From Macrostomum lignano (Eukaryota), in contig NIVC01000300.1 in assembly GCA_002269645.1 (NCBI GenBank), forward strand, positions 248,001-312,000: a DNA stretch of 64,000 nucleotides. Reading direction: 5' to 3'. Positions 1 to 51,754 of the stretch are shown here, piece by piece. Both the position numbers and the translations under genes were made by a program. Below the pieces are notes generated by a model that was not told where the DNA came from, made no database searches, and was given only the letters and a program-made list of their open reading frames with translations. Position 1 is the stretch's first letter. Each line of letters begins with the position of its first letter.

Positions 1-313
1 TTATTGTTTATCAACTGCCCCACTTATGTCTCGACCAATCGTGCATCAGTTTACCCGGAAACGTATACTTTAAAATAAAGTGTCAGGGATTTGCGCAATG
101 ATTCTAGAGACAACATACACTATAAATTTTGTTTAACTTATAATTGATTATGTCATATTGATACACGGTAAATGGATATGTGATCCAGCCATTGTTCAAT
201 GCATAGATTTTACAATGCACTTAATTTTAGTGTACTAACTGTTTACGTGCAATATTAATATTGTACATGTTTTCAGAACATTAACTACGAGTAAATGGAA
301 TGTGTCTTTCCAG

Positions 314-3300
314 GTGCAATTCGTCTGCACAATGAACCCGGTGTCAGTGGGTGGAGGCAGACAGAATCTGTCATCATCGTTAACCAAACTGCTCCTGAAT
401 GTGCACATTGAGGCGATGTCGAGAGAAGATACGGCTTTGATTATTAGAGAAAGATTTGCGAATAGGTTTCATGGAGAAGTTTAACGAGTAATTCAGTACC
501 ACCTGAAAATATTAGACTTTTCGACGAATAATACAGCTCGTAGGTTCAACATTAGGGATGTGGAAAAAGTTGCTGACCTAACCGATGTCATGCGCGGCTC
601 TGATCCGATTGGAGCTGCTTTGCGAATAGTTTACCATGAATGCGATCCTGAGGCGATCTCAGGCCAGCTTGGCGAAGCTCTGTCAGACGATTGTATGCTG
701 CCATCGCACCTTGATATCGGAGAAGTCATTCACTCACGAGATAGTCTTCGGAAGGTAAAGCCGACTCAAAGACTGCTTTCATTACTACACGCTTCAATAG
801 CGGCAAAGAAGGTTTGCCTGCTGACGGGTCCCCCAGCCTCGGGTAAAACTAGTGCAGTTTTCGAGCTTGCCCGGCGCCTTAAAAAGAAGATTTACTTCAT
901 CCCCATCCACGCCGAAACAAGCATTGCTGATCTGCTTGGCGGAATCGCACCCACTGATCTGCAAGAAACCGGTGACGATCAAAGAAAAAATGCGCAAAGT
1001 TTGGCAGCAACAATGGCAAAAAGGTATCCAGATGATGCAATTCAAATTATTGCTCCAAAGACTGCGAAGATAAAAAGGCATGCTGAACACAAGCCGACAT
1101 CTCAAAAAAAGAAACTCAAAAATCTAAAAAAGATTGTCGGTGAGAGTGCAATCGGCAGTGAAAAATATAAAAATGACGGATTCAAATTTATCGACGGCCC
1201 CTTGCTATCAGCATTGAAAGAAGGAGCATGGGTGCTCCTCGACGGAGTGGACTTGGCTCGCCCAGAAGTACTTGAGCGGCTGAACTCTCTTGGAGAACGA
1301 GACTCTTATCTATACACGCATGAACTAGCAGCTGGCAAATCTACTGAGCACAAACTCAAGCCTTGCGAGGGTTTTGCACTCATTTGCACAACTACTGACC
1401 AAAGATCAAATGGCAGTCAGCTATCTGAGTCCTTCAAAAATCGGTGCATACAGATATATTGCCCAAGATTCGATGTTGATTGTGATGCTTTGTGTGGCAC
1501 GCAGGTACTGATTGAGCCAGGAGCTCTAGTAGAACCTTTAAAAGTAAAGCTAGTGAAACTTTTAGTAGATGCCTTTCTGAAAGACAAAAGTCAACTTGGA
1601 TTTAGGTGGTTACAAAAGCAGATAAATGCAATTTCGCATATAAAGGACTCAAAAGCAGTAACTGACCTGCTGCCCGATTCCTGGTCAGATTTTGTACCCA
1701 GTCTAGAAGCAATTTTCAACGAGAAAAACTTTGGACAGCATCGAAATTTCTCAGGTAAAATTCAACTACTAAAGTTCGAGCTACCTGCAATGAAACTGGC
1801 TTCTGTGGAACTGAAGAAGCCCCTATCTGAAATTTTCGAGCTTCTTTCCGAAACATGCAGTCCAATTGGCCTATTGAAAGATGCGCCCATATTCTGCAGG
1901 AGGCGGAATGCGATTGCCCGCTTAGAGGAAAATCCAGAAGCGCAAGTGCGTTTGAAAATGGAAAGTGAGCCGTTTAAAAACAAGATTTTTAGTTCGATCT
2001 GGTCCCGAGATGTGCAGTTAACTTGCTCCAGCCTCGCCTTGAACCCACCAGGAGGACTGGAACGGTGGACTCTGTCTGGGATAATCGAGGATCAACGAAT
2101 CAACGAACTGAAATGGAAGCTGCACAGTCCTATTGGTGAAAAAACCATGTGCCTCGATATTCAAGCATCCAGTACAAATCTTCAGTTGGAAGACTTTTTG
2201 AGCAGGAAAACTCTTTCGCACATTGGCTATTTGGACGATCTCAAATGCATTAAGTTTCAGTCAGGGGAATACAGATGTCATATTAATAAAGCGAATGAAC
2301 TGAAACCAGAAAAAGCAGAATTGCAGGGTGGCAACGGAATTTTGAGTGGAGTAAATGTTAAGAATGCTACGCTGGTTATCAATATTTCAAAGTCACCTGC
2401 CAATTGGAAACTAACCAGCATGATTGGCCTGCTGACAAGTGGCGAGTTTAATGTGCACTTGACAAGCGAAAACCCTCATGCCGAACAAACAGACAAGTTT
2501 GCTACTCTTGATTTACTACCAGCTCTTCAGCTCTGTTTTCCGAATTACTTTAAAGCACCGAGTAAATTCACAGCTGAGGCGCCAGCAATCAGCTTTTGGC
2601 AAACAAAAAAAGCCCAAACAAATTTTGGAACTGTGAAAATCAAAATAACCGATGGACACTGGAAATCACCGTTTGGGCTCAACGCCAATATGAAGCTTTC
2701 TAATAAAGAGAGCAAAATGACACTAAATTTGCAAGATAAATGTGGCGAACTGCAGATAAATGGTGACATGCTTATTTGTGCTGTCCACAGTGGCCTTCGG
2801 GTGACTGTCTGTCTTCAGAGAGCAGGTGAAGTCAAATTGGTTTCTAATCACTCAGACAAAGACTATATGGAGAGGCTGCTCTTGCAATACATTTCCAAAG
2901 AATACCTCAAAGGTCAAAAAGAGGCCGAATCTCCAAAGCTACAGCTGATGACTAGTAGCAGTACTGATAAAGTACGTGAAGACAACTGTATCCTCGAACT
3001 TGATCTTCGCGGTGAATGGTGCATTCTCCGGTTTCTGCATCTCAGCCATGCAAAACTCAGAGTCTCCTCGACACCTGGGCCAATTCTCGAGTTTTCTGCA
3101 AAGGTTTTTAAATCTGCATTCATAAACGTTAAAGCAAAATTAAGTGAAAGCTCCATGTCCATTGACTCGTTCGCAGTGGAACAAGAGATCGATCTGCTGA
3201 CAGTGCTGTCAGTGCTTAGCTACGAAAAGCCAGAATTGACTGAAGCACTTCAAAGCAATAACTTTTTTACAAAGCCTCAAAACATAACGCTATCTGTCAA

Positions 3301-6300
3301 AACTATGATACTTCAAGACAAAAGAACACAAATTTCCCTTGAAGTAACTTTCTCGAATTCTATTCGGCTGCCGGAGTTTTCAGGTCAAGTGAGCATTAAA
3401 AATGCTACCTTGCATATGGAATATCAAGAAGAGCAATGGAAATTTGAAATATATGGTACATTATTTGCCTTCGACTTACAACTCGCAAAGGTCACGTGTA
3501 ACATCGGAGAAAACGGAATGGAGTTGAATGCTGCCAATTCAGAACAAAAATCCTGCCTAAATTTGCAAACGATCCTTGCAAAACTCTGTGGAGAGACCGA
3601 AGCCCTGCTAGTTTCTGAAACCTCAATAATTGGAGCGATCGATAATATACACGGGGAGCAGAGAATAGAAGAAGCGAATGACAGAGAAAGCAGAGAATGG
3701 GATTTGGAAGGGAAAGTTGAAAATTTCAACTTGTGCCAGGAATTAATTTCGAATATGCAGTATGAGGACACGAAACTGAAAGCAAAATTTTCTGAAACTA
3801 AAACTGACTGCAGGGTCGAAATTTCAGGTGACTTCATTCTCGCATTAACCCTTCGGCTCAAATATACTGTCGAATTCAGAACAGGGTCAGATATTGTATT
3901 AACAGCAGAAAGCAGTGCCATACAGGAAAATGGAAGCTTTATGGACTGCCTGCTCAATATTATAGAAATAAATGACGGATCGCAACAAAATACTGAAAAA
4001 CTCGGCATAAATAAAGTAAAACTGACGCTGAATATTTCGAAACAAGTTCTAAGTATCACCGGATCTATCACTGACGATTCAGTACTAAGTCTCGCAAACA
4101 TAGTGGAGTCGTTTGAGTCCCTGTTAGATGTAGAAGCCGGTGTGAGCAAAACAGAGTTTCTATCCGAGATGAAGTTCCAGCAGATAAAGGTTGAGTACAA
4201 AAACGAGAGAAAAAAGCATGTTAAAGAAAAGGCGTCGCAAGCTTCGCCTGTACAAACAGGTGACGAAAAGCATGAAGACAAAGCTGTTGAATCAAAGACT
4301 GAGAAATTGAATACCGAATCTACTACTGGCGAATCAGATAGCAAACACAGCGTGGCTGTGAGCGCAACAATGCCCTCTTTCCGATTCCCATTCACTGAAA
4401 TGATGGAACTAAAGAATCTTAACTTGTCCATCAACTGGAACAGCGTCGAGGGCATGAAAGACTTCAAAGTAACGGCTCAACTTTTAATTGCAAAGTACGA
4501 AGTCGGAAAGGTGGCCTTCAAATACGGAAAGAATGAAGATGGTGAGAACTCGTGGCTACTAGCTCTTCCCGAATCGTTTCAGCCTGACGCAGAAGCGCAG
4601 CTTGAGCCGCAAGCACTAGAACAGCCGATAAAGTTGAACGAACTGCTCATGTCGCTTCTGGGCATGAGTTCTATGCCAGACTTCAAATTGGAAGTGACCC
4701 ACATCAACCTGTTCATGTCTTGGAAGGAGAGAATACAGCCTGACCGTTGGAAGTTTGTCCTTCAACTCAACGAGCTAGAGATAGGCAGCGAGGATTTGAA
4801 GTTTAAGCTAAAAGATGTCAAGCTAATTGCAAGCAATATGAACGAAAATAAGGATGTTGACATTAAGGAGACGTTTACGTCTGCAAAGATATCGTTTAGT
4901 CTCGAGTTTGGCAACCAACGCACTGCAAAAGTGTTCCAGTTGGACAATTGTGAAGCTGAGCTACCTATAAGCAAAAATGCAAAGTGGAGGCTAAAAGTTC
5001 CGAAAAAGTCGGTGGACTACAGTATTGGAGACCTGGCATCGGCTCTGCTACCGCTTAGGGATACGGCAGGTAAAATCAATGATTTGGACCTGCCATTCGA
5101 CTTGACAATCAAAATGCTTGCCTTGGACATGGAGATGACGCGGGATCTCCATTTTTGCGACTTTGATTTTGAAGTGGTAGGAGAGTTGCAGTCTAGCTTT
5201 AAGTTTATCGATCAAATCATATTCGGAGTGAAGATTTTGCTCCTTAAGAAAAGCGTGACAGAAACTTCCGTCGCTAAGAAGAGCATCGAGTCAAACGAGC
5301 AACATGAAGCGGATAATAACACATCAGAGAAGGACAAGAGTGAAACAAATAAGCGTCAAGAAGGAAATTCCGACAATACAAATCAAATCCCAGATACAAA
5401 CGGTTGGGAAGTAGTGGGCTTCTGTTTTCTGAACATATTTACTCTCCCCATTAAGATGGTGCTAGTTGTTAATAACGAGCGCTGTGTTTTGGAACTCAGA
5501 TCGGAATTTCAATCTGGTCTCGTCGGCTGTCTTAATCCTTCATTCGGCGAACTAAGAGACGCTGCTCTAAATAAAATAGATGAATCAATTCAGCCAAACG
5601 AACAAACTATTGAGAGCGATGAAAAGCCGACTTCTCCAGAAAACAGTTCGACAAGTGAAGTTGGCGACAAAGCCAACGTCGAAAAGTGTGCACTCGTAGC
5701 CAGCGAATGTGATGCTGAGGAATCTCGCGAGTCAATGCTAGCTAGAAAGCCTCAAGAAAAGACTTTAAATGTAGCCAAAGTTGTTGCGGATCTTTTGGAC
5801 CTTCAGCCAGAACAGCTGCCCAATCTGATGCTAAAGTGGGATCCAGCTAAACTGTTTGATGCACACATCGACTTGACAGAAAGGAAAGGAGAGTTTCAAC
5901 TGCAATTGACTCAAATGAACTTTGAAATGCACAAATTGGCTATGCAGTTCAATAACACAAAGCTTTCTGTATCAGCAAGTCTCGGTGCAAAGCCTGTAGC
6001 AGCTCCAGCAGCTTCCATTGAAGGAGCACCAGCCCCAGTGTCTGGTACAAAAACGGAAAAAGAGGAACAATCAAAGTCGAGCAGTGATTCGTTGAGTAAA
6101 AAGACACAACAGCCACAACAGAGCAAAGCAGATTCGCCAAAGTATCATGTTACTCTTGAAGGAGAGCTAAAATTTCTTCGTTTGCCACCACTCGGATACA
6201 AAGCGGATTTAAATTCAAACGAAAAAGAAACTATTTTCTCTCTCACATCGGAGTGCAATTCAGATTTGAGCCTCGCAAACATAGTGGAGTCGTTTGAGTC

Positions 6301-9300
6301 CCTGTTAGATGTAGAAGCCGGTGTGAGCAAAACAGAGTTTCTATCCGAGATGAAGTTCCAGCAGATAAAGGTTGAGTACAAAAACGAGAGAAAAAAGCAT
6401 GTTAAAGAAAAGGCGTCGCAAGCTTCGCCTGTACAAACAGGTGACGAAAAGCATGAAGACAAAGCTGTTGAATCAAAGACTGAGAAATTGAATACCGAAT
6501 CTACTACTGGCGAATCAGATAGCAAACACAGCGTGGCTGTGAGCGCAACAATGCCCTCTTTCCGATTCCCATTCACTGAAATGATGGAACTAAAGAATCT
6601 TAACTTGTCCATCAACTGGAACAGCGTCGAGGGCATGAAAGACTTCAAAGTAACGGCTCAACTTTTAATTGCAAAGTACGAAGTCGGAAAGGTGGCCTTC
6701 AAATACGGAAAGAATGAAGATGGTGAGAACTCGTGGCTACTAGCTCTTCCCGAATCGTTTCAGCCTGACGCAGAAGCGCAGCTTGAGCCGCAAGCACTAG
6801 AACAGCCGATAAAGTTGAACGAACTGCTCATGTCGCTTCTGGGCATGAGTTCTATGCCAGACTTCAAATTGGAAGTGACCCACATCAACCTGTTCATGTC
6901 TTGGAAGGAGAGAATACAGCCTGACCGTTGGAAGTTTGTCCTTCAACTCAACGAGCTAGAGATAGGCAGCGAGGATTTGAAGTTTAAGCTAAAAGATGTC
7001 AAGCTAATTGCAAGCAATATGAACGAAAATAAGGATGTTGACATTAAGGAGACGTTTACGTCTGCAAAGATATCGTTTAGTCTCGAGTTTGGCAACCAAC
7101 GCACTGCAAAAGTGTTCCAGTTGGACAATTGTGAAGCTGAGCTACCTATAAGCAAAAATGCAAAGTGGAGGCTAAAAGTTCCGAAAAAGTCGGTGGACTA
7201 CAGTATTGGAGACCTGGCATCGGCTCTGCTACCGCTTAGGGATACGGCAGGTAAAATCAATGATTTGGACCTGCCATTCGACTTGACAATCAAAATGCTT
7301 GCCTTGGACATGGAGATGACGCGGGATCTCCATTTTTGCGACTTTGATTTTGAAGTGGTAGGAGAGTTGCAGTCTAGCTTTAAGTTTATCGATCAAATCA
7401 TATTCGGAGTGAAGATTTTGCTCCTTAAGAAAAGCGTGACAGAAACTTCCGTCGCTAAGAAGAGCATCGAGTCAAACGAGCAACATGAAGCGGATAATAA
7501 CAAATCAGAGAAGGACAAGAGTGAAACAAATAAGCGTCAAGAAGGAAATTCCGACAATACAAATCAAATCCCAGATACAAACGGTTGGGAAGTAGTGGGC
7601 TTCTGTTTTCTGAACATATTTACTCTCCCCATTAAGATGGTGCTAGTTGTTAATAACGAGCGCTGTGTTTTGGAACTCAGATCGGAATTTCAATCTGGTC
7701 TCGTCGGCTGTCTTAATCCTTCATTCGGCGAACTAAGAGACGCTGCTCTAAATAAAATAGATGAATCAATTCAGCCAAACGAACAAACTATTGAGAGCGA
7801 TGAAAAGCCGACTTCTCCAGAAAACAGTTCGACAAGTGAAGTTGGCGACAAAGCCAACGTCGAAAAGTGTGCACTCGTAGCCAGCGAATGTGATGCTGAG
7901 GAATCTCGCGAGTCAATGCTAGCTAGAAAGCCTCAAGAAAAGACTTTAAATGTAGCCAAAGTTGTTGCGGATCTTTTGGACCTTCAGCCAAACAGCTGCC
8001 CAATCTGATGCTAAAGTGGGATCCAGCTAAACTGTTTGATGCACACATCGACTTGACAGAAAGGAAAGGAGAGTTTCAACTGCAATTGACTCAAATGAAC
8101 TTTGAAATGCACAAATTGGCTATGCAGTTCAATAACACAAAGCTTTCTGTATCAGCAAGTCTCGGTGCAAAGCCTGTAGCAGCTCCAGCAGCTTCCATTG
8201 AAGGAGCACCAGCCCCAGTGTCTGGTACAAAAACGGAAAAAGAGGAACAATCAAAGTCGAGCAGTGATTCGTTGAGTAAAAAGACACAACAGCCACAACA
8301 GAGCAAAGCAGATTCGCCAAAGTATCATGTTACTCTTGAAGGAGAGCTAAAATTTCTTCGTTTGCCACCACTCGGATACAAAGCGGATTTAAATTCAAAC
8401 GAAAAAGAAACTATTTTCTCTCTCACATCGGAGTGCAATTCAGATTTGAGCCTCGCAAACATAGTGGAGTCGTTTGAGTCCCTGTTAGATGTAGAAGCCG
8501 GTGTGAGCAAAACAGAGTTTCTATCCGAGATGAAGTTCCAGCAGATAAAGGTTGAGTACAAAAACGAGAGAAAAAAGCATGTTAAAGAAAAGGCGTCGCA
8601 AGCTTCGCCTGTACAAACAGGTGACGAAAAGCATGAAGACAAAGCTGTTGAATCAAAGACTGAGAAATTGAATACCGAATCTACTACTGGCGAATCAGAT
8701 AGCAAACACAGCGTGGCTGTGAGCGCAACAATGCCCTCTTTCCGATTCCCATTCACTGAAATGATGGAACTAAAGAATCTTAACTTGTCCATCAACTGGA
8801 ACAGCGTCGAGGGCATGAAAGACTTCAAAGTAACGGCTCAACTTTTAATTGCAAAGTACGAAGTCGGAAAGGTGGCCTTCAAATACGGAAAGAATGAAGA
8901 TGGTGAGAACTCGTGGCTACTAGCTCTTCCCGAATCGTTTCAGCCTGACGCAGAAGCGCAGCTTGAGCCGCAAGCACTAGAACAGCCGATAAAGTTGAAC
9001 GAACTGCTCATGTCGCTTCTGGGCATGAGTTCTATGCCAGACTTCAAATTGGAAGTGACCCACATCAACCTGTTCATGTCTTGGAAGGAGAGAATACAGC
9101 CTGACCGTTGGAAGTTTGTCCTTCAACTCAACGAGCTAGAGATAGGCAGCGAGGATTTGAAGTTTAAGCTAAAAGATGTCAAGCTAATTGCAAGCAATAT
9201 GAACGAAAATAAGGATGTTGACATTAAGGAGACGTTTACGTCTGCAAAGATATCGTTTAGTCTCGAGTTTGGCAACCAACGCACTGCAAAAGTGTTCCAG

Positions 9301-12300
9301 TTGGACAATTGTGAAGCTGAGCTACCTATAAGCAAAAATGCAAAGTGGAGGCTAAAAGTTCCGAAAAAGTCGGTGACTACAGTATTGGAGACCTGGCATC
9401 GGCTCTGCTACCGCTTAGGGATACGGCAGGTAAAATCAATGATTTGGACCTGCCATTCGACTTGACAATCAAAATGCTTGCCTTGGACATGGAGATGACG
9501 CGGGATCTCCATTTTTGCGACTTTGATTTTGAAGTGGTAGGAGAGTTGCAGTCTAGCTTTAAGTTTATCGATCAAATCATATTCGGAGTGAAGATTTTGC
9601 TCCTTAAGAAAAGCGTGACAGAAACTTCCGTCGCTAAGAAGAGCATCGAGTCAAACGAGCAACATGAAGCGGATAATAACAAATCAGAGAAGGACAAGAG
9701 TGAAACAAATAAGCGTCAAGAAGGAAATTCCGACAATACAAATCAAATCCCAGATACAAACGGTTGGGAAGTAGTGGGCTTCTGTTTTCTGAACATATTT
9801 ACTCTCCCCATTAAGATGGTGCTAGTTGTTAATAACGAGCGCTGTGTTTTGGAACTCAGATCGGAATTTCAATCTGGTCTCGTCGGCTGTCTTAATCCTT
9901 CATTCGGCGAACTAAGAGACGCTGCTCTAAATAAAATAGATGAATCAATTCAGCCAAACGAACAAACTATTGAGAGCGATGAAAAGCCGACTTCTCCAGA
10001 AAACAGTTCGACAAGTGAAGTTGGCGACAAAGCCAACGTCGAAAAGTGTGCACTCGTAGCCAGCGAATGTGATGCTGAGGAATCTCGCGAGTCAATGCTA
10101 GCTAGAAAGCCTCAAGAAAAGACTTTAAATGTAGCCAAAGTTGTTGCGGATCTTTTGGACCTTCAGCCAAAACAGCTGCCCAATCTGATGCTAAAGTGGG
10201 ATCCAGCTAAACTGTTTGATGCACACATCGACTTGACAGAAAGGAAAGGAGAGTTTCAACTGCAATTGACTCAAATGAACTTTGAAATGCACAAATTGGC
10301 TATGCAGTTCAATAACACAAAGCTTTCTGTATCAGCAAGTCTCGGTGCAAAGCCTGTAGCAGCTCCAGCAGCTTCCATTGAAGGAGCACCAGCCCCAGTG
10401 TCTGGTACAAAAACGGAAAAAGAGGAACAATCAAAGTCGAGCAGTGATTCGTTGAGTAAAAAGACACAACAGCCACAACAGAGCAAAGCAGATTCGCCAA
10501 AGTATCATGTTACTCTTGAAGGAGAGCTAAAATTTCTTCGTTTGCCACCACTCGGATACAAAGCGGATTTAAATTCAAACGAAAAAGAAACTATTTTCTC
10601 TCTCACATCGGAGTGCAATTCAGATTTGAGCCTCGCAAACATAGTGGAGTCGTTTGAGTCCCTGTTAGATGTAGAAGCCGGTGTGAGCAAAACAGAGTTT
10701 CTATCCGAGATGAAGTTCCAGCAGATAAAGGTTGAGTACAAAAACGAGAGAAAAAAGCATGTTAAAGAAAAGGCGTCGCAAGCTTCGCCTGTACAAACAG
10801 GTGACGAAAAGCATGAAGACAAAGCTGTTGAATCAAAGACTGAGAAATTGAATACCGAATCTACTACTGGCGAATCAGATAGCAAACACAGCGTGGCTGT
10901 GAGCGCAACAATGCCCTCTTTCCGATTCCCATTCACTGAAATGATGGAACTAAAGAATCTTAACTTGTCCATCAACTGGAACAGCGTCGAGGGCATGAAA
11001 GACTTCAAAGTAACGGCTCAACTTTTAATTGCAAAGTACGAAGTCGGAAAGGTGGCCTTCAAATACGGAAAGAATGAAGATGGTGAGAACTCGTGGCTAC
11101 TAGCTCTTCCCGAATCGTTTCAGCCTGACGCAGAAGCGCAGCTTGAGCCGCAAGCACTAGAACAGCCGATAAAGTTGAACGAACTGCTCATGTCGCTTCT
11201 GGGCATGAGTTCTATGCCAGACTTCAAATTGGAAGTGACCCACATCAACCTGTTCATGTCTTGGAAGGAGAGAATACAGCCTGACCGTTGGAAGTTTGTC
11301 CTTCAACTCAACGAGCTAGAGATAGGCAGCGAGGATTTGAAGTTTAAGCTAAAAGATGTCAAGCTAATTGCAAGCAATATGAACGAAAATAAGGATGTTG
11401 ACATTAAGGAGACGTTTACGTCTGCAAAGATATCGTTTAGTCTCGAGTTTGGCAACCAACGCACTGCAAAAGTGTTCCAGTTGGACAATTGTGAAGCTGA
11501 GCTACCTATAAGCAAAAATGCAAAGTGGAGGCTAAAAGTTCCGAAAAAGTCGGTGAACTACAGTATTGGAGACCTGGCATCGGCTCTGCTACCGCTTAGG
11601 GATACGGCAGGTAAAATCAATGATTTGGACCTGCCATTCGACTTGACAATCAAAATGCTTGCCTTGGACATGGAGATGACGCGGGATCTCCATTTTTGCG
11701 ACTTTGATTTTGAAGTGGTAGGAGAGTTGCAGTCTAGCTTTAAGTTTATCGATCAAATCATATTCGGAGTGAAGATTTTGCTCCTTAAGAAAAGCGTGAC
11801 AGAAACTTCCGTCGCTAAGAAGAGCATCGAGTCAAACGAGCAACATGAAGCGGATAATAACAATCAGAGAAGGACAAGAGTGAAACAAATAAGCGTCAAG
11901 AAGGAAATTCCGACAATACAAATCAAATCCCAGATACAAACGGTTGGGAAGTAGTGGGCTTCTGTTTTCTGAACATATTTACTCTCCCCATTAAGATGGT
12001 GCTAGTTGTTAATAACGAGCGCTGTGTTTTGGAACTCAGATCGGAATTTCAATCTGGTCTCGTCGGCTGTCTTAATCCTTCATTCGGCGAACTAAGAGAC
12101 GCTGCTCTAAATAAAATAGATGAATCAATTCAGCCAAACGAACAAACTATTGAGAGCGATGAAAAGCCGACTTCTCCAGAAAACAGTTCGACAAGTGAAG
12201 TTGGCGACAAAGCCAACGTCGAAAAGTGTGCACTCGTAGCCAGCGAATGTGATGCTGAGGAATCTCGCGAGTCAATGCTAGCTAGAAAGCCTCAAGAAAA

Positions 12301-15300
12301 GACTTTAAATGTAGCCAAAGTTGTTGCGGATCTTTTGGACCTTCAGCCAGAACAGCTGCCCAATCTGATGCTAAAGTGGGATCCAGCTAAACTGTTTGAT
12401 GCACACATCGACTTGACAGAAAGGAAAGGAGAGTTTCAACTGCAATTGACTCAAATGAACTTTGAAATGCACAAATTGGCTATGCAGTTCAATAACACAA
12501 AGCTTTCTGTATCAGCAAGTCTCGGTGCAAAGCCTGTAGCAGCTCCAGCAGCTTCCATTGAAGGAGCACCAGCCCCAGTGTCTGGTACAAAAACGGAAAA
12601 AGAGGAACAATCAAAGTCGAGCAGTGATTCGTTGAGTAAAAAGACACAACAGCCACAACAGAGCAAAGCAGATTCGCCAAAGTATCATGTTACTCTTGAA
12701 GGAGAGCTAAAATTTCTTCGTTTGCCACCACTCGGATACAAAGCGGATTTAAATTCAAACGAAAAAGAAACTATTTTCTCTCTCACATCGGAGTGCAATT
12801 CAGATTTGAGCCTCGCAAACATAGTGGAGTCGTTTGAGTCCCTGTTAGATGTAGAAGCCGGTGTGAGCAAAACAGAGTTTCTATCCGAGATGAAGTTCCA
12901 GCAGATAAAGGTTGAGTACAAAAACGAGAGAAAAAAGCATGTTAAAGAAAAGGCGTCGCAAGCTTCGCCTGTACAAACAGGTGACGAAAAGCATGAAGAC
13001 AAAGCTGTTGAATCAAAGACTGAGAAATTGAATACCGAATCTACTACTGGCGAATCAGATAGCAAACACAGCGTGGCTGTGAGCGCAACAATGCCCTCTT
13101 TCCGATTCCCATTCACTGAAATGATGGAACTAAAGAATCTTAACTTGTCCATCAACTGGAACAGCGTCGAGGGCATGAAAGACTTCAAAGTAACGGCTCA
13201 ACTTTTAATTGCAAAGTACGAAGTCGGAAAGGTGGCCTTCAAATACGGAAAGAATGAAGATGGTGAGAACTCGTGGCTACTAGCTCTTCCCGAATCGTTT
13301 CAGCCTGACGCAGAAGCGCAGCTTGAGCCGCAAGCACTAGAACAGCCGATAAAGTTGAACGAACTGCTCATGTCGCTTCTGGGCATGAGTTCTATGCCAG
13401 ACTTCAAATTGGAAGTGACCCACATCAACCTGTTCATGTCTTGGAAGGAGAGAATACAGCCTGACCGTTGGAAGTTTGTCCTTCAACTCAACGAGCTAGA
13501 GATAGGCAGCGAGGATTTGAAGTTTAGGCTAAAAGATGTCAAGCTAATTGCAAGCAATATGAACGAAAATAAGGATGTTGACATCAAGGAGACGTTTACG
13601 TCTGCAAAGATATCGTTTAGTCTCGAGTTTGGCAACCAACGCACTGCAAAAGTGTTCCAACTGGACAATTGTGAAGCTGAGCTACCCATAAGCAAAAATG
13701 CAAAGTGGAGGCTAAAAGTTCCGAAAAAGTCGGTGAACTACAGTATTGGAGACCTGGCATCGGCTCTGCTACCGCTTAGGGATACGGCAGGTAAAATCAA
13801 TGATTTGGACCTGCCATTCGACTTCACAATCAAAATGCTTGCCTTGGACATGGAGATGACGCGGGATCTCCATTTTTGCGACTTTGATTTTGAAGTTCGT
13901 TGTGGGTTCAAGTCAAGCGTAGAAAAGTTTGAAATAGCTTGTCTGGGCTTCAAAATTTGTTACGGAGACGTAAAAAAGAATGCTGCTTCTTCACAAGAAT
14001 CGAAAATCGATTACGTTTCCTCTGGTGATGATTCAAAGAATTATTCAGGTGGGCTACCGTTAGGAAATAAATGGAAAGTATCGGCTTTTTGTTTGTTTAG
14101 GTTGTTTAATTCCGATTTTTGGATGCTTTTGAATGCAGAAGAGAAAGAATTGATATTCAACTCTGATTTTATTGGCTCTCTAAAGAGCATTGATCGGACG
14201 GGCTCGAAATCGTTATCTTTTTGTGATTTTGCACCTATTGATGACGATGAGGAAGACTGGAGCGTGAAGCCTTTATTAGATAAATTTGGAGAAGTTCCTC
14301 TGCCTGAAAATTCTTTGATTGTGAAAGTGAATTGGAGAAGGAAGACTTTTGTTTTGTCATCTGACTTGGATCGCTTTCAGGTGGCCGTCGCTGGCACAAA
14401 ACCTGGAAAAAAGCAGCTTTATTTAATTGGCTTGATGTATAAGCAAGACGAAAAATTGAGTTCGATTTGGAGCAAGCTGGAATTTTTGGATAGCATTGAT
14501 TGTCTCCCTACGTTTAAGGACATCAAGTTATTTTTATTCTTGCATTCAAGGAAGCTTGACTGTGCCTCAAAGTGTCGGGAGCTGTTTAATGATTTGCAGA
14601 AAGTAATGTCGTTTGGTTCAACCGATTTGCCAAATTTCGTTCAATCGAAAAAAGTCTCGAAGTTAATAGCGGTATTTTCGATCACGGCGCAGATGCCTGA
14701 CAATTGGTTATATACTGTACTCAATTTGGACGGCAGTCAATTTTCTGCCAACCTAGTGGTGCATAGATCAAAGGCTGCATTGGTCGCCTCTCTCGGAGAA
14801 TGTAGGTTGACCAAAAAACTAGTTTTGAATGCTGAGCTTCGACTTGTTAAGGTGAATTCAAAAGTTGATTTTTGCCTTGACGTCAGTCTAAAGTTTCCCC
14901 TGCCAACAAACTTCAAGTGCTCAGAGTTTCACAACGCTGCTTTGGCAGGTTCTCTGGAAGTAAAAACAGCTAAAAAGTCCGTGAGTGGCAGACTGGAGCT
15001 CAGAGGTGATGATGGAACGGCATGGCCCACTCCGTTTGGTCTTAAGTGTTTGACTGTGAGAAAGCTTTCGGCTGAGTTTGGGCTGCAGTTAAAGAAAGCA
15101 ATATCTTTTCAGATTCAAGTAGAAGTGAAGCTTTTCCAAACTGAACTTGGATTGACTGTTCAAGTGGTGGATGGCTTGATAGTAGCAGCAAATTTTTATT
15201 TCTATTATGATGGTAGTGTAAAAGAGCCACTTAGTCTCGTTGACTTATTAAAAGTTTTTGAAGGAGAAATTGATCTTGAGGTGGCTCGACTACTTCTTCC

Positions 15301-18300
15301 TGCATTCGATCACTTGTTTTTCTTGTACATCGCGCCTAGATTTAGTCTGGAGAATGTTAAATTTCCGGATCGAGCAGAATTCGTCCAGAGAATTAGCCAG
15401 GCTCAGGAGCAAAGTTGTGAGGGCAAAACCAGTGAAAAAACTCATGAATCTGACGGTAAAGGAAGTGATGTGGCTGGTTTCGTAACTTCTTTTGATTTTT
15501 CCGGACCAGTAGTAAAACTTGACGCTTCGATAACTTGGTTTGGTGCAACTGTAGCTCTGTGGGGAGAAATTTCGTGGGGAGATCCTAAAAATCCACGGCT
15601 ACAGTTTGGCGGATTGGTTAAAAAGCCTGTCAGAATTCTGCAACTTCTTGAAATATCGGAGTTCGACCAGCCCGCTGAAACGGGCCCGTATATCAACTTT
15701 CTAGTCAACAGGCAGGACGGTGTGAAGTTTTATTCAAGTGCTCGAATAAAGTTTCTCTTCTTGTGCGTTGGCGTGAAAATCGAACTCGACAGCAGCAGAA
15801 AATGCTTTAAGATTTCCGGAACATTTGAAATTCTTCACACGCTAAAAGTTTCAGGTTATATTTGCTTCGGCCTTCGCGGCTTCGTACCAACAATTGACTG
15901 GAATTTCAACTTTGAAATTAGCGAAAACATAAAAACTTTCATCGAAAAAGTCGTCAACAAAGTCACAGAGTTCTTTAGCGACATCGAGAAGAGCCTTGAT
16001 TCTAAAATCAAAAGCTTAGAAGAGAAGATTGAAAATTCGGAAGGAATCTGGAACATTGTACTTCGTGTCACAGATTCACTGCTTAAAGTTGGACGAGCTA
16101 TCATGCATGGAATAATGGCAGGCATAGATTTTATCGCTAATTGCATACAAGGGATCCGCGACTTTTTCAACAGAATATGGAACGAAAAATCTCCCCTAAC
16201 AACGGAGAACAGTCCCGTCAAGAAAATGTTGGTTTCTGGAGAAACTGAGAAGGATGGAGAGTTTCGAGCTTCCGCGTGCTACCATGTAGAAATGGAGGGC
16301 CAAACGTGCGCTGGAAAGTTCGAGTTCATGTTCAGTGATGCCTCCGGAGAAGAGTCCAGGACAAAGTTTGAAAACGGAATCGTAGACAGCATAGCGTCAG
16401 ACTACGTCGCCGCAAAATCTACGCAGCACGGGGGAGATCAAGAGCCAAACTTTTCTGACACGAACTTGACGGAAGAAAACCGACAGCAACTGAATTCAAT
16501 GAAGTCGCGCCTCGAAAAAGTCCAATCTCTGATGCAGGAAGCTAATAACAAAAAATTGATATCCGAATTTGACGACGGAGATAGTCGACGGTATTGCGGT
16601 GACAACAATGACCAGGGTAAAAATTCCGAAGGTCTTGACACATATGGACAAACCACCTGTGAAAATGATCAAGTTGATTCAGCGAGCAGAGATTGTGCAA
16701 CACAAAAAACTGAGAACGAGTGTAAGACTTTTAAGAACCGTGAAACGGCAAATGATAGCGATCGAGAAAATTTTGAACTGAAGTCTGAATCCATAGAGGA
16801 GCAACCAAAAACTGAACAAAAGGAACCGGATTGTGGAGAGAAACGGGAAGAAGAGGAGCATGAAAAACGAGTGAACGAGCAAGTGAACTCTGAAGAAAAA
16901 CAGGAAGAAAAGCAGGAAGAAGCTGAAGAAAAGCAGGAAGAAGCTGAAGAAAAGCAGGAAGAAAAGCAGGAAGTAGCTGAAGAAAAGCAAGAAGAAAAGC
17001 AGGAAGAAGCTGAAGAAAAGCAGGAAGAAGCTGAAGAAAAGCAGGAAGAAAAGCAGGAAGTAGCTGAAGAAAAGCAAGAAGAAAAGCAGGAAGAAGCTGA
17101 AGAAAAGCAAGAAGAAAAGCAGGAAGAAACTGAAGAAAAGCAGGAAGAAGCTGAAGAAAAGCAAGAAGAAAAGCAGGAAGAAACTGAAGAAAAGCAGGAA
17201 GAAGCTGAAGAAAAGCAGGAAGAAGCTGAAGAAAAGCAAGAAGAAAAGCAGGAAGAGGCTGAAGAAAAGCAAGAAGAAAAGCAGGAAGAAACTGAAGAAA
17301 AGCAGGAAGAAACTGAAGAAAAGCAGGAAGAAGCTGAAGAAAAGCAGGAAGAAACTGAAGAAAAGCAGGAAGAAGCTGAAGAAAAGCAGGAAGAAGCTGA
17401 AGAAAAGCAAGAAGAAAAGCAGGAAGAGGCTGAAGAAAAGCAAGAAGAAAAGCAGGAAGAAACTGAAGAAAAGCAGGAAGAAGCTGAAGAAAAGCAGGAA
17501 GAAGCTGAAGAAAAGCAAGAAGAAAAGCAGGAAGAGGCTGAAGAAAAGCAAGAAGAAAAGCAGGAAGAAACTGAAGAAAAGCAGGAAGAAACTGAAGAAA
17601 AGCAGGAAGAAGCTGAAGAAAAGCAGGAAGAGGTGGAAGAAAAGAAGGCAGAAGCAGAAGAAAGGCAGGCAGAAGCTTCAGACGATCAGCCAGAATCTGA
17701 AGTTTGTGGATCGGAAATCAAAGACAATCACCTAGAAGCAGAAGACAATGAACAAGAAGCTGAAGAAAATCAGGTACTCGAGGAAGCTGAACGCAGTGAA
17801 GTAAAGGCTGAAAACAAGCAGTCTGAAGCTGAAGAATATCAAAGAGAAAATAGCTCAAAGGAACCAGATACCGAAAGAGTTAAAATCAAAGAGAGTTTCT
17901 CCAAAACTGAAGAGAGTGTATCAGCAGAACCAGTATCAGCAACTGAAAATTCTGAGAATGAAGAGAGCCAACATGTAACTTCAAGTAGCCAACCTCAGGC
18001 TGAACGGAGCCACTTTGAATCCGAAGAGAGCCAACCTGATGCTAAAGAGAGCCAACCTGATGCTAAAGAGAGCCAACCTGATGCTAAAGAGAGCCAACCT
18101 GATGCTAAAGAGAGCCAACCTGATGCTAAAGAGAGCCAACCTGATGCTAAAGAGAGCCAACCTGATGCTAAAGAGAGCCAACCTGATGCTAAAGAGAGCC
18201 AACCTGATGCTAAAGAGAGCCAACCTGAAGCTAAAGAGAGCCAACCTAATGCTAAAGAGAGCCAACCTGAAGCTAAAGAGAGCCAACCTGATGCTAAAGA

Positions 18301-21139
18301 GAGCCAACCTGATGCTAAAGAGAGCCAACCTGATGTTAAAGAGAGCCAACCTGATGCTAAAGAGAGCCAACCTGATGGTAAAGAGAGCCAACCTGATGCT
18401 AAAGAGAGCCAACCTGATGGTAAAGAGAGCCAGCCTGAAGCTAAAGAGAGCCAGCCTGAAGCTAAAGAGAGCCAACCTGAAGCTAAAGAGAGCCAACCTG
18501 AAGCTATAGAGAGCCAGCCTGAAGCAAAGGAGAGACAGCCTGAAGCTGCCGAATATCCATCAGAAAATCAGGACGAGAATATTGCGACAGATCAAAAGCG
18601 ATCGGAGCCAATAGAGAGACGAGTTAGTTTTGCTAGCTTAGATGATGCAAGCCTGCATGGAGAACATCATGGCAATAATGATGGACCGCTGGTGCAGGAA
18701 CCAAAAAATTCCTATTTGGAAGATGACGATCAAAATGATGACTCACCAAATGGTAACGCACTTGAGGATTCTATGGAGCAACAGATGAAAGAAGTTGGAC
18801 ATGATGATTTCGATGGCGATCCGTGCACGATACGGTTTGGCTTTGAACTGAGTGAAAACGATGCTGCAAATCAAGGATCAGCTGAAGATTCTGTTTCGGT
18901 TGAAGAGGAAACTCAAAATGATACCGAAAATGATACTGAAAGTGGCACTGCGGATGACACTGAAAGTTCCGATTCTGAGCCACAAAAGCCAACACCTGAA
19001 AGTGGCGGTTACCTCCTGCGAGCATCGGAACTGACCGATGAGGATAAAAAGCAGCAAGTGCCTGAAAGCAGCTTGCAATGCGACATGAGCGGCAAAAATG
19101 TTCCAGGAGAGTGTGAATTCCACGAGACCGAAAGCAGAGAGGATTCGAATGACAACTCCTTAAAAACCGAGATTGCTCCAACTGAGAGGCGCGAACGTGT
19201 CCGAAGAAATAAGAAAATCGCAATATTTAAAGCGGAAGAAACCAACTGGTACAACATTCGTCACCTTGAATTTTACAACTTTTTTCTGTGTCAAAAAAGA
19301 AAATCAGAAGACCTTTTCCAACTTGCAGAAGCAATGAGCGTACCAGCTTCCGGCTCCAGAGTTTTGAGTCCCAGTAGCAGGCTGCAAGAACAGAAGGCGT
19401 TGATATTTATTGACTTTCGATGCATTGAAAGAGGCTATAGTGAGAGTTTGAATTACTTGTTGTTTCGTCTTCTGAGAGAAGCGAGCAGGAATGGAATACC
19501 TACAGATGTTGTGCTGACCGGTGACAGAAACTTTCAGGTGGAAAACCAGCGCTACGAATGCGTGATAAATATTCCTGCCGTCGTGTTTGAGGCTAAAAAG
19601 CCAATAATGCCACACAGCTTCCGCAAGCTGCTCCACAGGCTCCGTAGCCACACAGATGACGAGGCCATGATGCAATTCTACTGCGAGCACATTCAATGTA
19701 CCCCTCAATGGCTGTTCCTGATCACGAACAATTTCCGGTCATTTTCGCAGTTAGCAAAAAGACAGCTTGCAGATGTCAAGAGACCTGAAGCGTATTACGC
19801 TTTGCTTGGTGATGAAGCTGGTTCAATTGAATTCGGGAGCATTGCACTTGACGAACCCGAACCTCAGTTTGTTCCTGACGACTTTATTGCATCTCTAAGC
19901 TTTATGAAGACCGGGAGCGAATCCCCAGCCGAGCAAGACTGGAATAATCTATTTATGATTCCTGAAACTTTCAAAAAAGAAGTATTAGAAGAATGGGGAG
20001 TGCTGGAAAGTGCCGAAAGGGAAGTTGATACCACAGTGTTGAAACCACGCGGTGTTGATACTACAGATCGAAGAATAAAGGTATTCATAAAGGCCACAAA
20101 ATGCTTGCCAGCACTTCAACGAACATCATTATTGCCAACAGAGCATTTGAAATCTCATCAAACCATCAATTTTTCTGAATCTGAAACTAAAGAGGCGAAA
20201 GAAAGCTGGATGCTGATAAGGGAAACGACCGAGTCGGTTTGGATACAAATTTTTAAAGAGTTTCAGGGAATTTTTGCCAATTCCCGAAAGCGATATCGGC
20301 TAGCCGCTAGAGGCAAGAAGCTGAGCATTCGGGGGTTAATGAACTGGTACATGACAAACGGAGCAAACAACTTGATTTGGCTTCGGCCAATAGAATCACA
20401 GCGACGCGTCAAAATTGCTATGGGCATTGCTGTTGCTCTCACCAGCAGCACCATCAGCGCCAGACCCCTGCTGCTCCACAGTTTAGTGACCCTAGTCGAG
20501 GCATTTGAACGATTGAAGATTTCCGTATGCTGCGTGTCATTCTCAGAATCCTTGACAGTCATTAAGAACCCTGGCGTGGTCTGGCAGGTATCCGATAAAA
20601 TTCAACTGCTGAGATCCTTCACAAGCTTGGAGATTGTCCAATCAGTAAAAAGAGAAAAAGACATATATGCACTGCATCATTTAATGGCTCTTCTGCTGAA
20701 CGACGCAACCTTATCTTGGAATGACTACCGCACCATTCTGGTGCTCACGGACTCGGAGGTACCACAGTGTCAAAGGGAGAAAATAAGTGACTTTGAATTG
20801 CAAGCAGCCAGCAGAGGCGTGAAATGCTTTGCACTGAGTGTTGGAGAAGCAATGGCTGACCAGTACGGACTGTCAAAAAGCGTTCATGCCAGCAACATAG
20901 GTGGTTTGCCAGCTGCAGTGAAAACTATTCTAATGCAGCCTACGGGAGAAGAAGCAGAGTCAAGTCAAGCTCGGCATAACTGGTCAGATACTCCTGACAG
21001 CGAGAAACCATCATGGGATAATTACTGTGATGATTGCAACTGTATGAAACTGAATCCTGTCAAGCCTGACGGGGCTAATCCAAACGATGGAAAGTATTTG
21101 TCGGTCGGATTTGATTACTGCACTTTGGACAAAAAATAA
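314..21139 (+). CDS. Giant midasin-like AAA+ / beta-repeat / acidic / VWA protein (5'-partial, ~6,940 aa after repairing 1 in-frame TAA and 3 single-base deletions)
   Basis: AT-rich intron ending TTTCCAG at 313, then VQFVCTMNPVSVGGGRQNLS (midasin-type TMNP..GGR..L). ORFs 302-484, 560-8008, 8008-9465, 9345-11954 and 11954-21139 join into one frame. Walker A GPPASGKTS at 827-853; DLLGG...GFKFIDGPLLSALKEGAWVLLD; C-terminal GKKLSIRGLMNWYMTNGANNLIWLR resembles the midasin pre-MIDAS segment GKRLNMRKIIPYIAS..KDKIWLR. Not called MDN1 because the central region is unlike midasin. Confidence 0.8.
800..1480 (+). other. MoxR/midasin-type AAA+ module with long helix-2 insert
   Basis: VCLLTGPPASGKT (Walker A), ETSIADLLGG, ~75-aa basic insert, DGPLLSALKEG, WVLLDGVDLA (Walker B position), EVLERLNSL, ICTTT, QLSESFKNRC (R finger region). 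Confidence 0.85.
4091..13896 (+). repeat. Coding tandem repeat, 2,181-bp (727-aa) unit, ~4.5 near-identical copies
   Basis: CTCGCAAACATAGTGGAG recurs at 4091, 6272, 8452, 10632 and 12812; identity is lost after TTTGAAGT at ~13896. The same shadow ORFs recur at this spacing in the ORF track. Confidence 0.97.
16892..17640 (+). repeat. Coding low-complexity repeat (EEKQ / EEKQEEA / EEKQEET; 12- and 21-bp units)
   Basis: GAAGAAAAGCAGGAAGAAGCT-type units read in frame in ORF 11954-21139. Confidence 0.95.
18024..18545 (+). repeat. Coding 21-bp heptad repeat (ESQPDAK), ~25 copies
   Basis: GAGAGCCAACCTGATGCTAAA tandem units with D/E/N and A/G/V variants. Confidence 0.95.
20290..20940 (+). other. 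C-terminal midasin/CobT-type VWA domain, MIDAS motif degenerate
   Basis: GKKLSIRG...IWLR...KIAMGIAVALTSST...SLVTLVEAFERLKISVCCVSFSESLTVI...TILVLTDSE...CFALSVG follows the VWA beta/alpha order; the DxSxS aspartate is absent. Confidence 0.7.
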
Positions 21140-29300: not shown

Positions 29301-30336
29301 AGCCATAGCTGAAGATCTGCTGGGTGGCGCCACGCAGGGGAACGTGCTGCAGGTGTTAGAAGTTCTGCTCGCTCATGACATTGCAGCTCGCGCCGCTGTC
29401 GACCAGCACGTTGAATTCTTTCCCTTCGATCTGCAGGCGCATGTTGGCCGATCTTTGCCCTGACGACGCAGCCGGCGTCTGTATCGTGAATGCTTCTTCG
29501 GTGAGGTTGTCGGGCGAGACATAGATTGAGCTGCCGTCCGTGTTGTTTGCAACCACGTTGATGCTGGAAGAGTTCTGCTGCCGGCGTTGCCTGCAGGCCT
29601 TTGCGAGGTGGTTGGGCTTGCCGCATGACGAGCAGGTCTTCCCTTTCGCGGCGCCGCAGCTGCTGTGGCCGCGCTCTCCACAGCGGTAACAGGTGGTGTT
29701 GGAGGCGAATGTCGGCCTCTGGCCGTTTGGCTGTGGCTGGTCTCTGCGCTGGTTTGATGCCGACTTGTGAATGGCCGCGATGCTGCTGCTGCTGCTCTCC
29801 ATGGCTGTGGCCTGCTCTTCCGCGGCTTCTAGTGCGCGAGCCTGTCTGAGAGCATCGTTCAATGCGATGTTGCTCTCCTGGAGCAGTCGCCGTCTGAGCT
29901 TGTCGGAGCAGCAAGTTGCGACGATCTGGTCTCTAATGAGAGAATCCTTCAGGGTGGAGAACTCGCAGGCTTCAGCAGCTGCCTTTAGTCTAGCGTACCA
30001 GGCGTCCACCGGCTCTCCAGTCTGCTGCACGCAAAGTCTGAACTGGTAGCGGGCGAAGACGATACTCTTGCGTTCGTCAAAGTGTGCTGTAAGAGCGGCC
30101 AGCAAGTTGCTGAGGCTGTCTTTCTTGTCGTCCGGCAGGTCCTTGACGATTTGGGCGATCTCCCTGCCTGCCGTGTAGGACAGCAGTTTGCACTTCTGAG
30201 TTTCGGCCGTAATTCCGGATGCGTCGATAAAGTCGCGGAAGCGATCGGCCCACACGGTCCACCGTTTAGAGATGTTTTGTTGATCAGTGTTTGTGCTGAA
30301 TTGCTCAGGCGGTGGCAGGGAGATGAAATGCGCCAT
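26334..30336 (-). pseudogene. Gypsy gag-pol (single frame, interrupted)
   Basis: Gag with Cys/His knuckles (CYRCGERGH..C; CSSCGKPNHLAKAC), protease LVDSGAS, RT (LDITKAFHQ, WAHDDI), RNase H (VDASPVGLGA), integrase (MDF, ISDNGPPF, NGATER). In-frame TAA at 29356-29358 and a frameshift at ~27170. Confidence 0.92.
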
Positions 30337-51445: not shown

Positions 51446-51754
51446 ACGCCTCAGTCTAAAATCCCAGTAACGTAAATGTAAACGTACGTTGTACAGAAAT
51501 CTGCGAGAACAAAACAATGGGATTGAATGAGCGACCAAAACGGAAATGGGGAAAACCAAATACGCTCGTAAATTTACGCGAAAGTTCGCATTTACACGTA
51601 CGGCTCAATTGGTTGCCATGGAAACCAAAGCATCCGTTAGATTATTAAGATACTCGTATGTGAAAATTAATCTAGATAGTGCCATTGCAAAGGGCAAAAT
51701 TTACACTGGGCGACACTCGGACACGCGGGATATCAGAACGGGTTGCCATGGTTA

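What the first reader, a model, noticed from the sequence alone, without database searches (positions are those of the whole stretch)
2000..16200. Hidden sub-periodicity: a helix-plus-beta-meander module repeated ~25 times, possibly a lipid-groove (VPS13/AsmA/TamB-like) fold
Seen: each 727-aa unit holds four related sub-modules, each opening with a short amphipathic helix: LSLANIVESFES (4085), IKLNELLMSLLG (4628), YSIGDLASALLP (5018), LNVAKVVADLLD (5765), followed by several alternating-pattern strands. Similar helices lie outside the recent array: LDLLPAL (~2507), IDLLTVLSVL (~3188), LNLQTILAKL (~3557), LSLVDLLKVFEG (~15230). So the 2,181-bp repeat is a recent higher-order amplification of an ancient ~130-250-aa module. 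Established: repeating beta-groove bridge lipid-transfer proteins are built from beta-sheet-plus-helix modules. Inference: an AAA-linked, length-tunable rod or groove.
Basis: inference. Interest (0 to 1): 0.72.

Follow-up and report, generated by a model that had tools for sequence, protein, structure and literature searches.

The report
Modular beta-rich middle of midasin-like giant
The region is the beta-strand-rich middle of a giant, barely known midasin-like motor protein of the flatworm Macrostomum lignano; a short helix does recur about every 125 folded residues, but the modules cannot be shown to be related to each other and nothing ties them to lipid-transfer grooves.

Summary
The anatomy is largely real. 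The window comes from Macrostomum lignano. A 2,181-nt unit (727 aa) occurs as four near-identical copies plus a partial fifth. An annelid homolog (Owenia fusiformis, 3,952 aa) is collinear. It lacks the flatworm's low-complexity inserts and carries the same helix motif every 115-137 aa.

The claim that the four sub-modules are related is not supported. Pairwise, iterative-profile and profile-profile comparisons score no better than reversed-sequence decoys. The only significant ancient period is the whole four-module unit, about 515 aa in Owenia.

The lipid-groove fold is untested rather than refuted. Both AlphaFold models are unreliable (pLDDT 31 and 39). Foldseek, Pfam and PDB searches find nothing, and no Chorein_N start is detected.

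The context is a midasin-like AAA ring, then the beta-rich middle, a coiled coil, a tail with 35% D+E and a conserved C-terminal domain. I read the middle as a spacer or lever in a midasin-like mechanoenzyme. Three 1-nt deletions break the frame and are probably PacBio errors.

The parts
755..1502 (+). Last AAA_5 (MoxR/midasin-type) ATPase domain of the ring, with P-loop GPPASGKT. More AAA_5 domains lie in exons upstream of the window.
   Evidence: Pfam AAA_5 at E 1e-16. PDB midasin at E 1e-52 over aa 66-314. Upstream ORFs L001:2923-5505 and L001:5953-8949 carry AAA_5 and match midasin at 8e-61.
2000..4075 (+). Beta-rich stretch before the array, with helices LDLLPAL (2507), IDLLTVLSVL (3188) and LNLQTILAKL (3557).
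   Evidence: Coordinates checked. Alternating hydrophobic pattern enriched. No significant match to the unit, to Owenia or to Pfam.
4076..12796 (+). Four near-identical tandem copies of the 2,181-nt (727-aa) unit. Each holds modules A, B, C and D, opened by helices at unit aa 4, 185, 315 and 564. In copy 1 these are at 4085, 4628, 5018 and 5765.
   Evidence: Repeat families D3-D13. Alignment of copies shows about 10 variable columns. DSSP helices at the four sites.
7990..7990 (+). 1-nt deletion in copy 2 relative to the other copies. It ends ORF 560-8008.
9374..9374 (+). 1-nt deletion in copy 3 (GG to G). It shifts the frame.
11862..11862 (+). 1-nt deletion in copy 4. It shifts the frame.
12797..13897 (+). 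Partial fifth copy: A, B and the first 50 or so residues of C, near-identical to copies 1-4.
   Evidence: 97-100% identity per 100 columns up to about column 1100. (protein identical apart from scattered substitutions up to aa 367).
13898..15922 (+). Old, diverged modules C', D', A', E and F. These include the AVxSxTAxMP and AWPTPFGL motifs and the helix LSLVDLLKVFEG (15230). They are collinear with Owenia 1414-2084.
   Evidence: BLAST to the array unit at 32% identity, E 3e-17. 25% identity over 1,320 aa to Owenia, E 4e-101. Alignments A1 and A2.
15923..16184 (+). Two long helices (a likely coiled-coil hairpin) that close the beta-rich middle.
   Evidence: DSSP H859-895 and H900-945, the only stretch with pLDDT up to 75. 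Conserved in Owenia.
16650..19400 (+). Acidic low-complexity tail (35% D+E) with two in-frame micro-repeat arrays: EEKQEE-type at 16890-17677 and ESQPDAK x25 at 18024-18547.
19403..21139 (+). Conserved C-terminal globular region. By eye it has a VWA-like strand-helix pattern with a degenerate metal-site motif. No database confirms this.
   Evidence: 26% identity over 595 aa to the Owenia C-terminus, E 4e-43. Alignment A4. No Pfam or PDB hit.

Best explanation
Window 2000-16200 is the beta-strand-rich middle of one giant gene of Macrostomum lignano, a midasin paralog.

Architecture. The order is a midasin-type AAA_5 ring (partly upstream of the window), the beta-rich middle, a coiled coil, a tail with 35% D+E, and a conserved C-terminal domain.

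The middle. It is made of segments of about 125 folded residues. Each opens with a short, proline- or glycine-bounded hydrophobic helix and continues with long antiparallel hairpins. Four different segment types (A, B, C, D) form a super-unit of about 500 folded residues.

History. That super-unit is old: Owenia fusiformis has two diverged copies, collinear with the flatworm protein. In M. lignano it gained about 220 residues of disordered polar inserts. Unequal crossing-over between two older copies then amplified it very recently to 4.5 near-identical copies.

Function (inferred). The middle is a long mechanical spacer or lever between the ATP-driven ring and the substrate-binding tail. It takes the place of midasin's helical linker, and unit number sets its length. 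It is not shown to be a lipid conduit.

Frameshifts (inferred). The three 1-nt deletions are most simply uncorrected PacBio errors in a repeat that short reads cannot polish.
For: Source and assembly: (GCA_002269645.1), and (PMC5730564: Canu assembly of PacBio reads, polished with Pilon).

Array anatomy.

Midasin-type ring.

Acidic tail.

Homologs of the middle: only two in 1.84 billion representatives. They are Owenia CAH1795990.1 and a 2.1-kb fragment labelled as a bacterial MAG.

Collinearity with Owenia: 25% identity over 1,320 aa plus a C-terminal match at 4e-43. The rotated unit D-A-B-C shows 29.6% identity to Owenia 1031-1537, and the extra length is all low-complexity inserts.

Old super-unit period in Owenia: 515-525 aa at E 1e-12.

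Conserved AAA linkage in Owenia.

Helix plus long strands.

Regular module lengths.
Against: - The mechanical role is pure analogy with midasin. No part of the middle matches the midasin linker.
- The C-terminal domain is not detectably a MIDAS/VWA domain.
- No confident 3D model exists, so rod, chain of separate domains and open groove cannot be told apart.
- The three frameshifts could instead mean a decaying gene.
- The copy number could be wrong in a Canu assembly of a neopolyploid genome.
- Expression was not checked.
Confidence: 0.5

Rival explanations
1. The modules form a repeating beta-groove (RBG/VPS13/AsmA-like) open sheet with a hydrophobic concave face, so the protein would be an AAA-driven or AAA-anchored lipid bridge whose length is set by unit number.
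For: - Segments of 112-155 aa are each marked by one short helix next to a run of long amphipathic strands. This resembles the RBG unit described as a five-strand meander plus a sixth element that usually starts with a helix (PMC7613979).
- Neighbouring modules are not detectably similar. That is also common in RBG proteins.
- VPS13C/D were lengthened by internal duplications of about 500 residues.
Against: - No Chorein_N, VPS13, ATG2, AsmA or TamB hit in Pfam, even at E <= 10.
- No such hit in PDB sequences by phmmer or by profiles.
- All RBG proteins are reported to start with a Chorein_N-like RBG1 or a membrane helix. This protein starts with an AAA ring.
- Strand counts per segment are uneven (about 4-12) rather than five.
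- Foldseek gave nothing significant. A TamAB chain appears only at rank 23 with E 0.14 and TM 0.05.
- No AAA-fused RBG protein is known to me.
Confidence: 0.12
2. The middle is a chain of separate small alpha+beta or beta domains, each an N-terminal helix packed on its own sheet. It would act as a passive modular rod or as a protein-binding scaffold, as in other giant tandem-domain proteins.
For: - Module size is regular at about 125 aa.
- A conserved proline-bounded helix plus a PD turn lies at module starts (alignment A3).
- Low-complexity inserts are tolerated at several loop positions.
- Long strands show strict polar/non-polar alternation.
Against: - Tandem domains that arose by duplication usually keep detectable similarity. 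These do not.
- No domain family is hit in Pfam or PDB.
- No clear Pro/Gly/Ser linkers are seen between modules in Owenia.
Confidence: 0.25
3. The array is not functional as written. Either the gene is a decaying pseudogene, or the copy number and frames are assembly artefacts, so no length-tuning biology follows from it.
For: - Three frame-breaking 1-nt deletions occur, one each in copies 2, 3 and 4.
- The assembly is PacBio CLR with Canu and short-read polishing, from a repeat-rich neopolyploid.
- The surroundings are full of retroelements and satellites.
Against: - Apart from those three single bases, about 20.6 kb stays open in one logical frame.
- The deletions are each private to one copy, as random read errors would be.
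- The flanking unique parts are conserved with Owenia at protein level.
Confidence: 0.13

Closest known systems
Midasin (MDN1/Rea1)
   Same: - Several AAA_5 domains with strong sequence similarity (E 1e-52 to 8e-61).
- The same order of parts: ring, long middle, long D/E-rich tail (35% D+E here), and a conserved C-terminal globular domain.
   Different: - The middle is beta-rich and modular rather than midasin's helical linker, and it shows no similarity to that linker.
- Only four canonical P-loops were found in the DNA available.
- The C-terminal domain is not recognised as MIDAS/VWA by Pfam or PDB searches.
- A tandem 727-aa amplification is present.
Repeating beta-groove (RBG) lipid-transfer proteins: VPS13, ATG2, SHIP164/BLTP3, Hobbit/BLTP2, Tweek/BLTP1
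   Same: - A rod-scale run of beta-meander-plus-helix units of roughly 100-150 residues.
- Weak or absent similarity between neighbouring units.
- Growth by internal duplication of about 500-residue blocks (PMC7613979).
   Different: - No Chorein_N-type first unit or membrane helix.
- No sequence or profile similarity.
- Uneven strand numbers between helices.
- Fusion to an AAA ring and an acidic tail.
- No structural evidence for a groove.
Bacterial AsmA-like/TamB proteins
   Same: Long amphipathic beta-strand arrays.
   Different: - No Pfam AsmA or TamB hit.
- Eukaryotic, with no signal anchor and no membrane context evident.
- The Foldseek match to TamAB is insignificant (E 0.14, TM 0.05).
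Owenia fusiformis CAH1795990.1 (uncharacterised, 3,952 aa)
   Same: - A true homolog of the middle and the C-terminus, collinear with the flatworm protein.
- The same helix motif at module starts.
- A multi-AAA_5 gene lies directly upstream on the same strand.
   Different: - Two old diverged units instead of 4.5 recent ones.
- No low-complexity inserts inside modules.
- Many introns.
- Weak PBZ-like zinc fingers at the extreme C-terminus (E 0.019).

Membership tests
RBG (repeating beta-groove) superfamily | A unit made of a five-strand beta meander plus a sixth element that starts with a helix and crosses back (PMC7613979). | tested here: inconclusive
   Low-confidence AlphaFold DSSP shows one helix at each module start. 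Between helices there are about 6-8, 6-7, 5, 12, 4 and 5 strands. Mean pLDDT is 39, so topology cannot be read.
RBG (repeating beta-groove) superfamily | A first unit homologous to Chorein_N, or an N-terminal membrane helix. | tested here: not met
   There is no Chorein_N hit in any segment at E <= 10. The polypeptide upstream of the middle is an AAA_5 ring.
RBG (repeating beta-groove) superfamily | A continuous hydrophobic concave face along the rod. | not testable with these tools
Strand alternation fits any amphipathic sheet.
RBG (repeating beta-groove) superfamily | Sequence, profile or fold similarity to VPS13, ATG2, BLTP1-3. | tested here: not met
   No match in Pfam, PDB phmmer or profiles or Foldseek against PDB. 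A profile-profile search against RBG alignments (HHpred) could not be run.
AsmA-like / TamB | A match to the AsmA, AsmA_2 or TamB (DUF490) models, with an N-terminal membrane anchor. | tested here: not met
   No Pfam hit. The TamAB chain in Foldseek scores E 0.14 and TM 0.05.
Midasin family | A ring of six tandem AAA_5-type domains. | tested here: inconclusive
   Four canonical P-loops and at least four AAA_5 matches lie in the window plus 9.4 kb upstream. Similarity to midasin is strong. The 5' end of the gene was not reached.
Midasin family | A conserved helical linker after the ring. | tested here: not met
   PDB midasin matches stop at aa 314 of the window ORF. The following stretch of more than 4,000 aa is beta-rich with no match.
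Midasin family | A D/E-rich region followed by a C-terminal MIDAS (VWA) domain. | tested here: inconclusive
   The D/E-rich region is present (35% D+E over 916 aa). The C-terminal domain is conserved with Owenia. It has no Pfam or PDB VWA hit. The VWA-like pattern rests on my reading only.

The most novel reading that the evidence does not exclude
The helix-plus-meander modules of this spiralian family join into one continuous open beta sheet of RBG type. The protein would then be the first lipid-groove or amphipathic-sheet rod fused to a midasin-type AAA motor. Its reach would change by gain and loss of a 4-module unit.
Probability: 0.1. Interest if true: 0.85.

Novelty: new variant of a known kind. 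Interest (0 to 1): 0.42.

Why it matters
Midasin has been treated as a single, universally conserved ribosome-assembly motor with a helical linker. This protein keeps the ring, the acidic tail and a conserved end domain but replaces the linker with a modular beta-rich array. It is present in at least a flatworm and an annelid, and it is almost absent from 1.84 billion representative proteins.

If expressed, it is an untouched member of the AAA+ mechanoenzymes. It also carries a natural length series: two old units in Owenia against 4.5 recent units in M. lignano. M. lignano is transgenic-tractable, so the protein's role is testable.

For the scan itself, the case shows two things. A recurring helix motif and regular spacing can be real without demonstrable homology. 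Amphipathic-strand similarity also scores about as well against reversed decoys as against the real sequences.

Tried and rejected
- Pairwise Smith-Waterman of modules A-D with shuffles was not significant.
- Chunked BLAST of the non-redundant flatworm middle and of Owenia against themselves, with reversed controls, found only the whole-unit period.
- jackhmmer from each module recruited only orthologous counterparts at strict inclusion. At loose inclusion the B profile pulled in reversed decoys at 1e-18, so loose hits are worthless.
- hhalign of module profiles, with and without inserts, gave a best P of 0.0013-0.004. Four of the six A-D comparisons aligned start-to-start. That is partly by construction, because modules were cut at the helix motif.
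- A regex and a motif matrix for the helix give suggestive spacing. The counts are not clearly above the reversed sequence.
- AlphaFold on one unit alone, and on 956 aa with a 6-row alignment, both gave low confidence. Foldseek on the second model was meaningless.
- All three word-indexed protein searches found nothing beyond the AAA domain.
- Two metagenome scans and one prokaryote-genome scan found no further relatives. One alignment was too variable to search with.
- PDB profile searches of the B-C modules, the post-array region and the C-terminus found nothing.
- A literature search for midasin paralogs found nothing relevant.
All protein work used intact stretches.


Full report
**What is at the coordinates.** One reading direction (+) carries a giant coding region from 560 to 21139. 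It is listed as four ORFs: 560-8008, 8008-9465, 9345-11954 and 11954-21139. A 2,181-nt unit is repeated head to tail with start-to-start spacings of 2181, 2180, 2180 and 2180 nt.

Aligning the copies shows four full copies (4076-12796) that differ at about 10 columns. A fifth copy is near-identical for about 1,100 nt and then drops to background DNA identity. The three ORF breaks are three private 1-nt deletions near 7990, 9374 and 11862, one each in copies 2, 3 and 4. All protein work used intact stretches: copy 1 at 4076-6256, a rotated unit at 5765-7945, and copy 5 plus what follows at 12797-16699.

**Source.** The first ORF's product occurs once in the protein collection, on contig NIVC01000300.1 of GCA_002269645.1. 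That is the Mlig_3_7 assembly of Macrostomum lignano. The assembly is PacBio CLR with Canu, polished with Pilon (PMC5730564). Short reads cannot polish a tandem array of near-identical 2.2-kb copies, so single-base deletions there are most simply read errors. This is an inference.

- All eight helices are at exactly the stated coordinates.
- AlphaFold's secondary-structure calls place helices on all five sites that were modelled. These are H2-11, H187-195, H317-332 and H566-573 in the unit, H3-11 and H133-144 in copy 5, and H630-637 for LSLVDLLKVFEG.
- Long strands of 10-15 residues lie between the helices, although confidence is low.
- Alternating hydrophobicity is enriched 2.7-fold over shuffles in the middle (z = 5-6) and not in the AAA part.
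- The helices are hydrophobic rather than strongly amphipathic.

**Relatives.** Word-indexed searches found only AAA-domain relatives. A full HMMER scan of 1.84 billion representatives with 1,199 aa of the middle found two proteins.
- P0012 is an uncharacterised 3,952-aa protein of the annelid Owenia fusiformis.
- P0011 is a 688-aa fragment on a 2.1-kb contig filed under a Kangiellaceae MAG. It is probably eukaryotic contamination.

Owenia is collinear with the flatworm protein: 25% identity over 1,320 aa (E 4e-101) and 26% over the last 595 aa (E 4e-43). The gene directly upstream of it on the same strand encodes 2,544 aa with several AAA_5 domains. The AAA linkage is therefore conserved.

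**The sub-periodicity.** Owenia has no low-complexity inserts, and there the helix motif falls at 777, 904, 1031, 1146, 1283 and 1414. The rotated flatworm unit D-A-B-C aligns end to end with Owenia 1031-1537 at 29.6% identity. The flatworm's extra 220 residues are all polar low-complexity inserts. With the inserts removed, the modules measure 131/155/137 (A), 130/129/127/131 (B), 143/115/127/124 (C) and 116/115/115 (D).

A regular architecture of about 125 folded residues per helix is therefore real and conserved between two phyla.

Relatedness of the four module types is a different matter.
- Smith-Waterman z-scores are 0.4-1.5, with C-D at 3.1.
- Chunked BLAST finds nothing off-period above the reversed control in either protein.
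- In Owenia the only significant internal repeat has a period of 515-525 aa, the whole four-module unit, at E 1e-12.
- jackhmmer from each module recruits only its own counterparts. Once loosened, it recruits reversed decoys.
- Profile-profile comparison gives a best P of 0.0013-0.004 and probability below 20%. Decoys reach 0.0065-0.012.

Forward scores are slightly higher than decoy scores, and four of the six A-D comparisons align start to start. The modules were cut at the motif, which favours exactly that outcome. I treat it as a hint and not as evidence.

**History of the array.** After the identical part of copy 5, the protein continues as a diverged copy of the unit (32% identity to module C, E 3e-17). 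It then runs through modules that match Owenia 1538-2084 and the front of P0011.

The ancestor therefore already had at least two diverged units followed by D', A', E and F. The flatworm expanded the block between two old A-B-C stretches, most simply by unequal crossing-over. The order of events is my inference.

**The fold.** A single-sequence AlphaFold model of the unit has mean pLDDT 30.6. A 956-aa model built with six alignment rows has mean pLDDT 39.3 and pTM 0.26. Only the terminal coiled coil reaches 75, and module B reaches 50-63.

Foldseek against the PDB returns nothing at E <= 0.001 and TM scores of 0.12 or below. Porins, ApoB100 and a TamAB chain appear among generic beta-rich noise. 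Pfam finds nothing in any segment or in Owenia, apart from a weak PBZ finger. PDB searches by sequence and by three profiles find nothing.

Measured against the published definition of RBG proteins (a five-strand meander plus a helix-led sixth element; a first unit homologous to Chorein_N or a membrane helix):
- the Chorein_N feature is not met;
- the strand count is uneven and uncertain;
- the groove itself cannot be tested here.

The lipid-groove reading therefore stays a possibility without positive evidence. I put it at about 0.1.

**Context and likely mechanism.**
- The window's AAA domain matches midasin at E 1e-52.
- Two ORFs just upstream of the window add more AAA_5 domains at E 8e-61.
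- Four canonical P-loops are visible.
- Two long helices follow the beta-rich middle.
- Next come 916 aa with 35% D+E, which include two in-frame micro-repeat arrays.
- Last is a 578-aa domain conserved with Owenia.

This is midasin's order of parts with a different middle. My best reading is that the middle is a long spacer or lever between an ATP-driven ring and a substrate-binding end, with its length set by unit number. That reading rests on architecture alone. The midasin linker is not matched, and the end domain is not demonstrably a MIDAS domain.

**Verdict.**
The unit, the helices, the strands and the regular spacing are real. Module homology is not shown.
The recent amplification and the AAA linkage hold. 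The ancient single module and the lipid groove are not shown.
- The family itself is a new variant of the midasin kind and is essentially uncharacterised.

Noticed in passing
window 290-480 (L001 about 9700-9890) and L001:2923-8949: An exon fragment in another frame (FVCTMNPVSVGGGRQNL...) completes an AAA domain that starts upstream of the window. It is separated from the 560 ORF by a stop. The gene's 5' part has introns, and the ring lies mostly outside the window.
   Followed up: partly
window 16890-17677 and 18024-18547: Two in-frame micro-repeat arrays lie inside the acidic tail. One has EEKQEE-type units with 21/33/108-nt periods. The other has 25 copies of a 21-nt unit encoding ESQPDAK at 95% identity.
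   Followed up: partly
window 26334-30336, minus strand: An LTR-retrotransposon-like pol (reverse transcriptase, RNase H, integrase zinc finger) and a gag-like ORF with a zinc knuckle lie in a GC-rich block (about 59% GC).
   Followed up: partly
window 33411-34046, minus strand: An ORF with a nucleoside diphosphate kinase domain followed by a Dpy-30 motif (E 1e-44 and 3e-17). This is a separate neighbouring gene.
   Followed up: no
window 43872-45335, minus strand: A second, weak reverse-transcriptase fragment lies in another GC-rich block.
   Followed up: no
window 48549-64000: A dense cluster of at least a dozen unrelated micro- and minisatellite arrays, with periods of 4 to 264 nt. They account for the strong GC-skew swings and the spurious long ORFs there.
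   Followed up: partly
P0012 (Owenia) residues about 3840-3900: Two tandem C-x5-C-x7-H-x5-H motifs at the extreme C-terminus give a weak PBZ (poly-ADP-ribose-binding zinc finger) hit at E 0.019. They are absent from the flatworm protein.
   Followed up: no
P0011 (MEE4247435.1): A 688-aa fragment filed as a Kangiellaceae bacterium MAG protein is 31% identical to the flatworm unit and has the same module order. It is probably animal DNA binned into a bacterial genome.
   Followed up: partly
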